The notes beneath the pieces are model-generated. The model searched no databases and was not told where the DNA came from. It was given only the letters and a program-made list of their open reading frames with translations. From NCBI RefSeq assembly GCF_001194135.2, contig NC_068992.1:22170554-22234553 (forward strand): DNA of 64,000 nt, read 5' to 3'. The stretch's first letter is position 1, and each line of letters opens with the position of its first letter. Position numbers and translations under genes: made by a program. The stretch comes from Octopus bimaculoides. Its lineage: Eukaryota. Shown here piece after piece: positions 43,681-44,046 of the stretch.

Positions 43681-44046
43681 GTGCAGTTACTGTTAATACC
43701 TCGTTCAGAGATTTAACATTGCTTGTTTTCAGTTTTTCGATATCAGTGAATAATTTCACTGGAAAAACTTATATATATTTGCCAAGGGATGCCTTTTGCA
43801 TCGAAGGTCGGCGATTGTCGTACACTGAAGAAGGGAAATAACCCTGAAACTCGAGTACGTACGTATCGTAGATCAAGATGGGAAAGATAACTTCCCTTGG
43901 CAAATACAGTCAGGACACAGAAGTGTGTCGATAGCCAGCTGGAGGAGATGTCCTCCTGGGGCTAAAAGCAACAGTAACATCCACCCCTCGGGGTCAGCCA
44001 CATTTAAGTGGCAAATATACTTCACTTTATCGTGCAGTTACTGTTA
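43681..44046 (+). mobile_element. 351-bp structured unit bounded by a direct repeat (retrozyme-like or Penelope pLTR-like)
   Basis: GTGCAGTTACTGTTA at 43681 and 44032. Contains an intact hammerhead and at least six hairpins. It starts where a family A fragment breaks off and runs into a 287-N gap. Confidence 0.6.
43819..43863 (+). ncRNA. Type-I minimal hammerhead ribozyme, canonical core
   Basis: CGUAC-A-CUGAAGA-AGGG(AAAUAA)CCCU-GAA-ACUCGAGU-A|C-GUACG. Stem I 5 bp with a 1.1/2.1 mismatch, stem II 4 bp, self-complementary stem III ACUCGAGU. Predicted GUA cleavage after 43857. Confidence 0.8.

What the first reader, a model, noticed from the sequence alone, without database searches (positions are those of the whole stretch)
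43681..44046. Retrozyme-like unit: intact hammerhead in a 351-nt hairpin-rich, directly repeated monomer
Seen in sequence: a fully canonical hammerhead core (C3U4G5A6A7G8A9, G12A13A14, A15.1-U16.1, GUA site, cut after 43857) with a self-complementary stem III (ACUCGAGU). A perfect 14-bp stem encloses it (43776-43789 with 43893-43906), and an alternative 11-bp partner lies at 44009-44019. Further hairpins occur at 43744-43761, 43788-43802, 43914-43929, 43932-43964, 43983-43994 and 43997-44012. A 9-bp long-range pair joins AACAGTAAC (43971) to GTTACTGTT in the terminal repeat. GTGCAGTTACTGTTA recurs with a 351-bp period, and the second copy runs into a 287-N gap where a second ribozyme would fall (cut near 44208). 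Established: minimal type-I hammerheads with palindromic stem III are typical of Penelope-like elements and can cleave as dimers; metazoan retrozymes are tandem units of a few hundred nt that yield circular RNAs. Inference: this is a non-autonomous ribozyme retroelement that could produce a ~351-nt circRNA. I do not know of one described in cephalopods.
Basis: partly seen in the sequence, partly recalled or inferred. Interest (0 to 1): 0.85.

Follow-up and report, generated by a model that had tools for sequence, protein, structure and literature searches.

The report
Hammerhead-ribozyme retrozyme-like repeat unit
A 351-base, non-coding, very tightly folding DNA unit carrying a hammerhead self-cleaving ribozyme motif looks like one more member of the "retrozyme" family of small mobile elements known in mussels, corals and salamanders. 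An assembly gap hides whether it is tandemly repeated, and this copy may be a weak or dead cutter.

Summary
The described features are in the sequence and are not chance. A type-I hammerhead (HHR) lies at 43806-43874, with all core bases canonical and the cut after A43857. It sits at the tip of a 131-nt interrupted hairpin inside a 351-nt unit that folds far better than shuffles (z = -8.1). A covariance model built only from three experimentally validated retrozyme HHRs (coral, mussel, axolotl) ranks this site first in the 64-kb window (22.2 bits, E about 4e-4).

Its architecture is the "canonical metazoan type I" form found in tandem-repeat retrozymes. It is not the minimal form found in Penelope-like elements.

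Three caveats:
- Rfam reports no hit at any threshold.
- The helix I pair next to the cut site is an A.C mismatch.
- Helix II closes with A-U instead of G-C.

So "intact" is overstated.

Tandem organisation is unproven: one unit plus 15 nt is assembled before a 287-N gap. Two observations favour the 15-mer being element sequence rather than a target-site duplication. No second copy exists in the window, no Penelope ORF lies within about 6 kb, and no related copy could be retrieved from any collection.

Verdict: probable non-LTR retrozyme copy, a new member of a known kind, of moderate to low interest.

The parts
43681..44031 (+). One complete 351-nt repeat unit (monomer): non-coding, 42% GC, highly self-paired
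   Evidence: 15-nt direct repeat at period 351 (D6). MFE -126.5 kcal/mol, z -8.1 against 100 dinucleotide shuffles. Circular fold -121.3 kcal/mol with 61% of bases paired. Ranks 13th of 865 sliding windows, and most of those that rank higher lie in microsatellite-rich, low-GC stretches. Longest ORF is 50 aa, with no Pfam hit.
44032..44046 (+). First 15 nt of a second unit (head-to-tail overlap), ending at the assembly gap
   Evidence: Identical to 43681-43695. Nine of the 15 nt pair with 43970-43978 inside the unit. The first copy begins exactly where homology to the flanking SINE family stops.
44047..44333 (.). 287-N assembly gap where the rest of a second unit, with a second cut site near 44208, would lie if the unit is tandem
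   Evidence: The right edge of the gap is (TA)n. Three of the 13 sized gaps in this window, counting this one, have one non-microsatellite edge, so the unique left edge is not diagnostic.
43806..43874 (+). Type-I hammerhead ribozyme motif with extended helix I
   Evidence: Descriptor scan. Model R1, built from validated retrozyme HHRs, gives 22.2 bits and E 3.9e-4 at 43818-43864, the top hit in the window. The HHR-compatible fold is -17.1 kcal/mol against a local MFE of -23.1.
43825..43831 (+). Core strand C3-A9 (CUGAAGA)
   Evidence: Sequence.
43832..43845 (+). Helix II (AGGG/CCCU, 4 bp, closing pair A10.1-U11.1) with 6-nt loop 2, AAAUAA
   Evidence: Sequence and fold.
43846..43857 (+). G12 A13 A14, then helix III as the 8-nt palindrome ACUCGAGU (2 bp plus loop UCGA in a monomer, 8 bp between two copies), then A17. 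The cut falls after 43857.
   Evidence: Sequence. Cofold of two copies gives -34.5 kcal/mol against 2 x -15.0, with an intermolecular 8-bp helix III.
43811..43824 (+). Helix I 5' strand: outer GCGAU, internal loop UGU, inner CGUAC, then A2.1 (mismatched with C1.1)
   Evidence: pair list.
43858..43869 (+). Helix I 3' strand: C1.1 (mismatched), GUACG, U, AUCGU. The overlapping GUAC repeat allows an inactive register 43855-59.
43776..43906 (+). 131-nt interrupted hairpin arm closed by a perfect 14-bp stem (43776-89/43893-906), with the hammerhead at its tip
   Evidence: helix list.
43686..43694 (+). GUUACUGUU, the 5' half of the 9-bp long-range helix with 43970-43978 that closes the multibranch fold
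43970..43978 (+). AACAGUAAC, the 3' half of that long-range helix. It can also pair with 44037-44045 in the next unit.
43590..43680 (-). Flank, not part of the element: a 5'-truncated SINE 3' end with its microsatellite tail, ending at the base before the unit
   Evidence: blastn to four other SINE copies in the window and direct comparison of sequences.

Best explanation
This is a genomic copy of a non-autonomous, hammerhead-bearing retroelement of the non-LTR retrozyme type. It is assembled as one 351-nt unit plus the first 15 nt of the next.

Proposed mechanism (inferred from the family, not shown here):
1. A multimeric transcript, or a transcript of two or more units, folds.
2. Each hammerhead has a monomeric helix III of only 2 bp, so two hammerheads pair through the palindrome ACUCGAGU to form a double hammerhead.
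3. Each then cuts after A17 (43857 in this unit), releasing a 351-nt linear RNA with 5'-OH and 2',3'-cyclic phosphate ends.
4. A host tRNA-type ligase circularises this RNA into a compact, highly base-paired circle, in which the more stable alternative register of helix I keeps the ribozyme off.
5. A reverse transcriptase supplied in trans, most plausibly from a Penelope-like element, copies the circle or multimer. The resulting head-to-tail DNA is then inserted.

What is shown: the motif, its architecture, the fold, the head-to-tail overlap, and the absence of coding capacity.

What is inferred: cleavage, circularisation, mobilisation, and the presence of a second unit in the gap.

This particular copy may be catalytically weak or dead because of the A.C mismatch at 1.1-2.1. 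A single transition, C43858 to U or A43824 to G, would give a perfect 6-bp helix I.
For: - All 11 invariant core positions are present, together with 3 helices in type-I topology.
- The architecture equals the published canonical metazoan type I HHR: helix I of 6 positions, helix II of 4 bp, helix III of 1-2 bp plus a 2-4 nt palindromic loop.
- It aligns column for column with the cloned, self-cleaving retrozyme HHRs of coral, mussel and axolotl. Mussel has ACGCGCGU and axolotl Ax353 has ACACGUGU in place of ACUCGAGU. Ax353 also has a GUA site and a non-G-C 10.1-11.1 pair.
- A model built from those three alone ranks this site first in the window at 22.2 bits, E 3.9e-4. Background hits begin at 10.6 bits.
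- Unit length of 351 nt and 42% GC fall within the family ranges of 150-450 bp and under 45-50% GC. Mussel units are about 350-390 bp.
- The fold has z -8.1, with the HHR at the tip of a 131-nt arm.
- There is no ORF or Pfam domain in the unit, and none in the stop-free segments of 45 aa or more that were scanned in 37.4-50.3 kb (a few simple-repeat-rich ones left out).
- Head-to-tail 15-nt overlap. The 15-mer pairs over 9 nt with the unit interior; only 2.9% of genomic 15-mers do as well.
- The first copy of the 15-mer starts exactly where SINE homology ends, and the 15-mer is not SINE sequence. Both points argue that it is element sequence, not a target-site duplication.
- The dimeric helix III is energetically favoured.
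- Octopus genomes are reported to carry Penelope elements, if the window is indeed from an octopus.
Against: - Only one unit is assembled. The defining tandem arrangement and the second ribozyme are hidden in the gap, whose right edge is (TA)n. Three of the 13 sized gaps here, counting this one, have one unique edge, so the gap could be pure microsatellite.
- There is no second copy in the 64-kb window.
- No related sequence turned up in protein-space searches of all six frames, exact-ORF look-ups, or metagenome and viral pattern scans. The one hit shares only the 33-nt ribozyme.
- Rfam gives no hammerhead hit at any threshold.
- There is an A.C mismatch at 1.1-2.1 and an A-U pair at 10.1-11.1.
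- The - strand folds almost as well (z -8.0), so the structure alone does not show selection at the RNA level.
- The fold is far more structured than the validated retrozymes, which have z -0.8 to -3.6.
Confidence: 0.6

Rival explanations
1. Solo (monomeric) insertion of the same kind of hammerhead-bearing non-autonomous element. On this reading GTGCAGTTACTGTTA is a 15-bp target-site duplication, the element proper is 43696-44031, and the gap holds only (TA)n. With a single ribozyme it could not release a unit-length RNA or a circle.
For: - Penelope-type integration gives target-site duplications of variable length and often targets (TA)n.
- Retrozyme families contain monomeric derivatives in proportions from 0 to 1.
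- The right edge of the gap is (TA)n, and a unique edge opposite a microsatellite edge occurs at two other gaps.
- TRF sees no 351-nt array.
Against: - The 15-mer forms the 9-bp closing helix of the unit's fold, with p about 0.03 for a random genomic 15-mer.
- Its first copy starts exactly at the end of SINE homology, yet it is not SINE sequence. A duplication of host target would therefore have to begin by coincidence at the SINE boundary.
- The contig stops exactly at the end of the repeat.
Confidence: 0.17
2. Fragment of a Penelope-like element: a pseudo-LTR or a strongly truncated copy, with the ordinary PLE hammerhead.
For: - PLE pseudo-LTRs carry type-I hammerheads, and most genomic copies are truncated and dispersed.
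- Retrozymes are reported to derive from pLTRs.
- The neighbourhood is rich in microsatellites.
Against: - The architecture is not the PLE min-HHR. Helix II is 4 bp rather than 7-8 bp, there is no bulge 5' of helix II, and helix III is present.
- No RT or GIY-YIG signal appears in the scanned stop-free segments of 45 aa or more within 37.4-50.3 kb, although five gaps lie in that span.
- The unit repeats head to tail at 351 nt, not at about 3 kb.
Confidence: 0.08
3. Chance hammerhead-like motif inside an unrelated hairpin-rich repeat, such as foldback DNA or a MITE-like element. The 15-nt repeat would then be an assembly or scaffolding artefact.
For: - Rfam gives no hit.
- Both strands fold equally well.
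- The bare descriptor would give on the order of a hundred or more chance matches in a genome of about 2.7 Gb (extrapolated).
- A second, context-free HHR-like motif in the same window (13997-14045) shows that such motifs turn up.
Against: - The conjunction is too specific. There are 11 core bases, a 4-bp helix II, an 8-nt palindromic helix III of the same design as validated retrozyme HHRs, and a helix I extended by 5+4 further pairs, all placed exactly at the tip of a long arm.
- The unit ends carry no terminal inverted repeats (sequence).
- A 15-nt exact repeat within 2 kb is not expected by chance; my estimate is about 0.002.
Confidence: 0.07

Closest known systems
Non-LTR retrozyme of the mussel Mytilus galloprovincialis (cloned copy Mg353; Cervera & de la Pena 2020, PMC7229834)
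   Same: - Same phylum, if the window is molluscan.
- Unit of about 350-390 bp, low GC and non-coding.
- Type-I HHR with a 4-bp helix II, a 6-position helix I, and an 8-nt palindromic helix III (ACGCGCGU in mussel, ACUCGAGU here).
   Different: - No sequence similarity outside the ribozyme.
- Mussel has G10.1-C11.1, a GUC site and a paired A2.1-U1.1. Here these are A-U, GUA and an A.C mismatch.
- The mussel element is proven tandem, has about 5000 copies, self-cleaves and is expressed as circRNA. None of that is shown here.
- The mussel unit folds only slightly better than shuffles (z -0.8), against -8.1 here.
Axolotl retrozyme Rtz_353 with HHR_Amex2 (same paper)
   Same: - Unit of about 350 nt and a GUA cleavage site.
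- Helix III of 2 bp plus a tetraloop within an 8-nt palindrome (ACACGUGU).
- A non-G-C pair at 10.1-11.1, and weak activity as a monomer.
   Different: Vertebrate host, 51% GC, up to 120,000 retrozyme copies in the genome (two families), and no sequence similarity. Its helix I is fully paired.
Classical hammerhead satellite repeats (newt satellite 2, as cited; Schistosoma satellite DNA, as cited), now regarded as retrozymes
   Same: Tandem units of a few hundred bp, each with a type-I HHR that can act as a dimer through a short palindromic helix III.
   Different: Those are high-copy arrays with demonstrated transcripts and cleavage. Rfam's Hammerhead_1 model does not score the present motif at all.
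Minimal hammerheads in Penelope-like element pseudo-LTRs (Cervera & de la Pena 2014, PMC4209133)
   Same: Type-I topology, a dimer-dependent design, and an association with retroelements that insert near microsatellites. PLEs are the probable source of the reverse transcriptase.
   Different: The min-HHR has a 7-8 bp helix II, a 4-5 bp helix I, a bulged base 5' of helix II and no helix III, and it flanks an RT/GIY-YIG ORF. None of these features is seen here.

Membership tests
Hammerhead ribozyme, type I (canonical metazoan architecture) | Conserved core C3 U4 G5 A6 N7 G8 A9 / G12 A13 A14 / A15.1-U16.1 / H17 | tested here: met
   CUGAAGA at 43825-31, GAAA at 43846-49, U43856 and A43857.
Hammerhead ribozyme, type I (canonical metazoan architecture) | Helix II of about 4 bp with a capping loop; helix III of 1-2 bp with a 2-4 nt palindromic loop | tested here: met
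   AGGG/CCCU with loop AAAUAA; AC/GU with loop UCGA. The closing pair 10.1-11.1 is A-U rather than the usual G-C.
Hammerhead ribozyme, type I (canonical metazoan architecture) | Helix I of about 6 bp, open-ended, followed by an internal loop 1 | tested here: inconclusive
   Five Watson-Crick pairs (43819-23/43859-63) are preceded by an A.C mismatch at 2.1-1.1. They are followed by internal loop UGU/U and 5+4 more pairs. One transition would restore 6 bp.
Hammerhead ribozyme, type I (canonical metazoan architecture) | Score at or above the curated threshold of Rfam Hammerhead_1 (RF00163, 34 bits) | tested here: not met
   No hit at the gathering score, and none at E<=10 in 451-nt and 81-nt searches.
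Hammerhead ribozyme, type I (canonical metazoan architecture) | Recognised by a sequence-plus-structure model of experimentally self-cleaving retrozyme HHRs | tested here: met
   Model R1 (coral, mussel, axolotl) gives 22.2 bits, E 3.9e-4, the best of 128 kb searched with filters off. The seed has only three sequences and the calibration is rough.
Hammerhead ribozyme, type I (canonical metazoan architecture) | Site-specific self-cleavage | not testable with these tools
   Requires in vitro transcription of monomer and dimer constructs.
Non-LTR retrozyme (Cervera & de la Pena 2020) | Head-to-tail tandem repeat of two or more units, each with a type-I HHR | tested here: inconclusive
   One unit plus 15 nt is assembled and the rest is a 287-N gap. 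Indirect arguments favour the 15-mer being unit sequence.
Non-LTR retrozyme (Cervera & de la Pena 2020) | Unit of 150-450 bp with low GC (below about 45-50%) | tested here: met
   351 bp and 42.5% GC, against the ranges given.
Non-LTR retrozyme (Cervera & de la Pena 2020) | Non-coding, with no LTR, PBS or PPT | tested here: met
   The longest ORF is 50 aa and there is no Pfam hit. The only direct repeat is the 15-mer. PBS and PPT were not searched for specifically.
Non-LTR retrozyme (Cervera & de la Pena 2020) | Monomer RNA is highly self-paired | tested here: met
   z -8.1, and 61% of bases paired as a circle. This is stronger than the validated members.
Non-LTR retrozyme (Cervera & de la Pena 2020) | Multi-copy, dispersed family in the genome | not testable with these tools
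   There is a single copy in the 64-kb window. No collection available here holds this genome.
Non-LTR retrozyme (Cervera & de la Pena 2020) | Expressed as linear and circular RNA of unit length | not testable with these tools
   No RNA data were accessible.
Non-LTR retrozyme (Cervera & de la Pena 2020) | Co-occurrence with autonomous Penelope-like elements in the same genome | not tested
   No PLE ORF lies within about 6 kb. The literature reports Penelope in octopus genomes, but the organism of this window was not verified.
Penelope-like element pseudo-LTR / min-HHR | Min-HHR architecture: helix II of 7-8 bp with a 5' bulge, helix I of 4-5 bp, and no helix III | tested here: not met
   Helix II is 4 bp with no bulge, and helix III is present.
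Penelope-like element pseudo-LTR / min-HHR | Flanks an RT plus GIY-YIG ORF, with repeats about 3 kb apart | tested here: not met
   No Pfam family at E<=0.01 in the scanned stop-free segments of 45 aa or more from 37.4 to 50.3 kb. The caveat is that five gaps lie in that span.

The most novel reading that the evidence does not exclude
The unit belongs to an active retrozyme family in a cephalopod, which would be the first reported in that class. The family would yield abundant about 351-nt circular RNAs. Its hammerhead would naturally carry A2.1.C1.1 and A10.1-U11.1, and it would be embedded in an unusually rigid fold whose alternative helix I register acts as an on/off switch between cleavage in multimers and stability in the circle.
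Probability: 0.2. Interest if true: 0.5.

Novelty: new member of a known kind. Interest (0 to 1): 0.33.

Why it matters
Retrozymes are an established but still thinly sampled class of ribozyme-driven mobile elements and a natural route to small circular RNAs. If confirmed, this would extend them to a further lineage; the searchable literature links no hammerhead or retrozyme to cephalopods beyond general remarks on PLEs. It would also give a compact, very stable 351-nt scaffold for studying how a dimer-dependent hammerhead is switched off in the circle. A single, possibly crippled copy next to an assembly gap does not change what is known about the family.

Tried and rejected
- **Rfam.** Searched at the gathering score on the whole window, and at E<=10 on 451 nt and 81 nt. 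There was no hammerhead hit at this site.
- **Other copies in the window.** blastn with word size 7 found none, and TRF found no 351-nt array.
- **Protein-space retrieval.** A six-frame concatenated translation of the circularised unit gave 0 hits with E<=0.01 among 8000 word-sharing candidates, which looks like a cap on how many are scored. The three longest frames alone gave 0 hits among 335 candidates.
- **Filling the gap via other assemblies.** Exact-ORF look-ups for an ORF in the unit and for two long ORFs elsewhere in the window were not on record.
- **Reaching the same genome through a Tc1/mariner-like transposase remnant.** Only three hits came back, at 48% identity or less. The collections therefore hold little or nothing of this genome.
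- **Pattern scans** with CTGANGANGGGN6CCCNGAAACTCGAGTH. The viral collection gave 0 hits. The metagenome collection gave one 3.6-kb eukaryote-like contig, L001, which shares only the 33-nt ribozyme (81%). It has no repeat, no ORF and no similarity to the window. It is uninformative about this family.
- **Gap-edge argument.** I first thought a unique left edge implied a collapsed repeat. Two other gaps show the same pattern, so I dropped the argument.
- **CpG-decay explanation for the mismatch.** The window is hardly CpG-depleted (o/e 0.88), so this carries no weight.
- **G.U asymmetry between strands.** Counts were 5 versus 6 G.U pairs, which is not discriminating.
- **Template-switch chimera with the adjacent SINE.** Rejected, because it would require the antisense strand of the ribozyme RNA as template (reasoning).
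- **Including axolotl Ax330 in the model seed.** MAFFT misaligned it, so it was left out.
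Full report
**1. What is there**

The window is a gap-rich draft eukaryotic scaffold with 17 runs of N, 36% GC, and microsatellites and SINE copies throughout.

The finding's coordinates hold up. GTGCAGTTACTGTTA occurs at 43681-43695 and again at 44032-44046, exactly 351 nt later (family D6). The second copy abuts the 287-N gap 44047-44333, and (TA)n follows the gap.

The hammerhead elements are all present:
- CUGAAGA at 43825-31.
- Helix II, AGGG/CCCU, with loop AAAUAA.
- GAAA at 43846-49.
- The palindrome ACUCGAGU at 43849-56.
- A17 at 43857.

The 14-bp perfect stem, the alternative 11-bp partner and the listed hairpins are confirmed.

**2. Is it more than chance?**

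- A structural descriptor finds this site and nothing else in the window on either strand. The descriptor requires the core, helix II of at least 3 bp, helix III of at least 2 bp and helix I of at least 4 bp.
- In 40 Mb of first-order Markov sequence with the window's composition, the descriptor matched 8 times loosely and once as well as observed. That is 0.003-0.03 expected per window, but of the order of a hundred or more in a genome of a few Gb.
- The bare motif is therefore not proof. What makes chance untenable is the conjunction of three things: helix III is a full 8-nt palindrome; helix I continues beyond a UGU/U internal loop for 5+4 more pairs; and the motif sits precisely at the tip of a 131-nt arm closed by the perfect 14-bp stem.
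- The 351-nt unit folds at -126.5 kcal/mol, z = -8.1, and no shuffle of 100 does as well.
- Among 865 sliding windows of the same length it ranks 13th, and most of those that rank higher lie in microsatellite-rich, low-GC stretches.

**3. Rfam is negative; a model of validated retrozyme ribozymes is positive**

Rfam 15 gives no hammerhead hit here at the gathering score, nor at E<=10 when only 451 nt or 81 nt are searched. That must be stated plainly.

The supplement of Cervera & de la Pena 2020 prints cloned, self-cleaving genomic retrozymes of a coral, a mussel and the axolotl. Their ribozymes align with this one column for column:

| Source | Helix I 5' | Core | Helix II 5' | Loop 2 | Helix II 3' | G12-A15.1 | Helix III inner | U16.1 | H17 | Helix I 3' |
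|---|---|---|---|---|---|---|---|---|---|---|
| coral | CACUGCA | CUGAUGA | GGCC | AGAAA | GGCC | GAAA | CAGUACUG | U | C | UGCAGUU |
| mussel | AGCGUCA | CUGAUGA | GUCU | UUUGU | AGAC | GAAA | CGCGCG | U | C | UGGCGUA |
| axolotl Ax353 | CACCUCA | CUGAUGA | UGCC | CACUA | GGCU | GAAA | CACGUG | U | A | UGGGGUU |
| this locus | UCGUACA | CUGAAGA | AGGG | AAAUAA | CCCU | GAAA | CUCGAG | U | A | CGUACGU |

I built a covariance model from the first three only. Searched over the whole window with filters off, it puts 43818-43864 first at 22.2 bits, E 3.9e-4. A second site, 13997-14045 on the - strand, scores 20.0 bits, E 0.0017. Everything else scores 10.6 bits or less. The seed is tiny and the calibration rough, so the E-values are indicative only, but the separation from background is clear.

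**4. Which kind of hammerhead**

Cervera & de la Pena 2014 define the canonical metazoan type I HHR as follows: helix I of 6 bp, helix II of 4 bp, and helix III of 1-2 bp capped by a 2-4 nt palindromic loop. It is active as a dimer when a second copy is near. They contrast it with the PLE min-HHR, which has a helix II of 7-8 bp, a helix I of 4-5 bp, a bulged base 5' of helix II and no helix III.

It departs from the validated examples in three ways:
- Pair 1.1-2.1, next to the scissile bond, is C.A where all four published HHRs have U-A.
- Pair 10.1-11.1 is A-U. Ax353 has U.U there and cleaves poorly.
- The repeat GUACGUACG lets the 5' strand CGUAC pair four bases upstream, at 43855-59. This gives a local fold of -23.1 kcal/mol, against -17.1 for the catalytically competent fold.

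Two copies of the ribozyme cofold at -34.5 kcal/mol, against -30.0 for two monomers, through an intermolecular 8-bp helix III. This is as expected for a dimer-dependent hammerhead. "Intact" is therefore too strong. The copy is one transition away from a perfect 6-bp helix I, and its activity cannot be predicted.

**5. Tandem repeat or target-site duplication?**

This is the weak point, and it cannot be settled with the data at hand. Only 1.04 units are assembled. TRF sees no array. The unit has no second copy in the window. Nothing right of the gap resembles it.

I first thought that the unique left edge of the gap implied a collapsed repeat. However, 3 of the 13 sized gaps, this one included, have one unique edge opposite a microsatellite edge, so the gap may be nothing but (TA)n.

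Two observations favour the 15-mer being part of the element:
- Nine of its bases form the closing helix of the unit's multibranch fold with 43970-78. Only 2.9% of genomic 15-mers from this window have so long a complement inside 43696-44031.
- The left flank 43590-43680 is the 3' end and microsatellite tail of a SINE family with at least four other copies in the window. Its homology stops at 43680, the base before the 15-mer, and the 15-mer is not the continuation seen in any of the other copies.

An insertion into the SINE would have duplicated SINE sequence. A duplication of unrelated host sequence would have to start, by coincidence, exactly at the SINE's truncated end.

Head-to-tail DNA of more than unit length is what a multimeric or circular template would give. 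I put this reading at roughly three to one over a target-site duplication.

**6. Context**

The unit has no ORF longer than 50 aa. The stop-free segments of 45 aa or more and of sufficient sequence complexity from 37.4 to 50.3 kb (a few simple-repeat-rich ones were left out) gave no Pfam family at E<=0.01. So no Penelope RT or GIY-YIG ORF is attached in the assembled sequence, although five gaps lie in that span.

PLE integration is reported to give target-site duplications of variable length and to favour (TA)n. The (TA)n on the right fits that, but it is weak evidence in so microsatellite-rich a genome. Octopus genomes are reported to contain Penelope families, some recently active.

**7. 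Attempts to find relatives**

- Protein-space searches with all six frames of the circularised unit gave 0 hits.
- Exact-ORF look-ups were not on record.
- A search with a transposase remnant from the window returned identities of 48% or less only. The collections therefore essentially lack this genome.
- A pattern scan for the ribozyme found nothing in viral contigs. In metagenomes it found one eukaryote-like contig that shares only the 33-nt motif and has no repeat or ORF.
- There is no sequence similarity to the published coral, mussel or axolotl retrozymes outside the ribozyme. That is expected, since these elements are species-specific.
- The published units fold only modestly better than shuffles (z -0.8 to -3.6), against -8.1 here.
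- The - strand folds as well as the + strand (z -8.0). The structure is therefore encoded as DNA-level inverted repeats and does not by itself prove selection on the + strand RNA.

**8. Conclusion**

The most likely reading (about 0.6) is a copy of a non-LTR retrozyme-type element. It is a non-autonomous unit whose multimeric transcripts would be cut by paired hammerheads after A43857 and ligated to a compact 351-nt circle. The circle would then be copied back to DNA by a reverse transcriptase supplied in trans, probably by a Penelope-like element.

Shown here are the motif, its class, the fold, the head-to-tail overlap and the lack of coding capacity. Cleavage, circularisation, mobilisation and the second unit are inferred from the family.

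The rivals are:
- A solo insertion with a 15-bp target-site duplication (0.17).
- A PLE pseudo-LTR fragment (0.08).
- A chance motif in an unrelated foldback repeat (0.07).

In the searchable literature, no paper links hammerheads or retrozymes to cephalopods beyond general remarks on PLEs. Retrozymes are, however, already documented in molluscs and many other phyla. This is therefore a new member of a known kind, and of modest interest unless the family proves active.

Noticed in passing
window 13997-14045 (- strand): A second type-I hammerhead-like motif with the textbook core: CUGACGAG, helix II GACA/UGUC, CGAAAC, helix III ACA/UGU with loop CCGAA, and a GUU site. Model R1 gives 20.0 bits, E 0.0017. 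Rfam Hammerhead_1 gives 19.6 bits, below its threshold of 34. Helix I has two mismatches, again including A2.1.C1.1. The surrounding 351 nt are unstructured (z +0.54) and not repeated. It is possibly a decayed relic or a chance match.
   Followed up: partly
window 43590-43680, and 43150-43330, 24687-24840, 33672-33850, 40408-40560, 59481-59640: Several copies of one SINE family lie in - orientation, each with a microsatellite tail on its left. One 5'-truncated copy ends exactly at the base before the hammerhead unit.
   Followed up: partly
window 38921-39625 (- strand): Remnant of a Tc1/mariner-like transposase, split across frames. The best database relatives are only 31-48% identical (PF13384, PF13551, PF13358). 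Pfam scanning of the fragments themselves gave nothing at E<=0.01.
   Followed up: partly
L001 583-615 (metagenome contig ERZ1740055 NODE_19508, 3573 nt): A eukaryote-like contig carries a solitary hammerhead-like motif with the same GAAACUCGAGUA helix III and a GGG/CCC helix II: CUGAUGACGGGUGAAAACCCAGAAACUCGAGUA, with a 5-bp helix I. It has no repeat, no long ORF and no similarity to the window.
   Followed up: partly
window 29019-29454: A minisatellite with 54-nt and 108-nt periods (about 6 and 3.6 copies, 90-92% matches) runs into a 10-N gap.
   Followed up: no
whole window (17 N runs): Nearly all sized gaps are bordered by (TA)n, (CA)n or (CT)n on at least one side. Assembly breaks in this scaffold therefore mostly mark long microsatellites.
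   Followed up: yes
window 7379-8200: A low-complexity stretch whose frames read as long His-rich, Asp-rich and Ile/Val-rich runs. It coincides with the highest CpG observed/expected values in the window (up to 2.55 at 7606-8073).
   Followed up: no
window 48887-49111 (+ strand): By eye only, this stop-free segment resembles the C-terminal tail of a LINE ORF2 (...DKTLWKRCL...). Pfam gave no hit.
   Followed up: no
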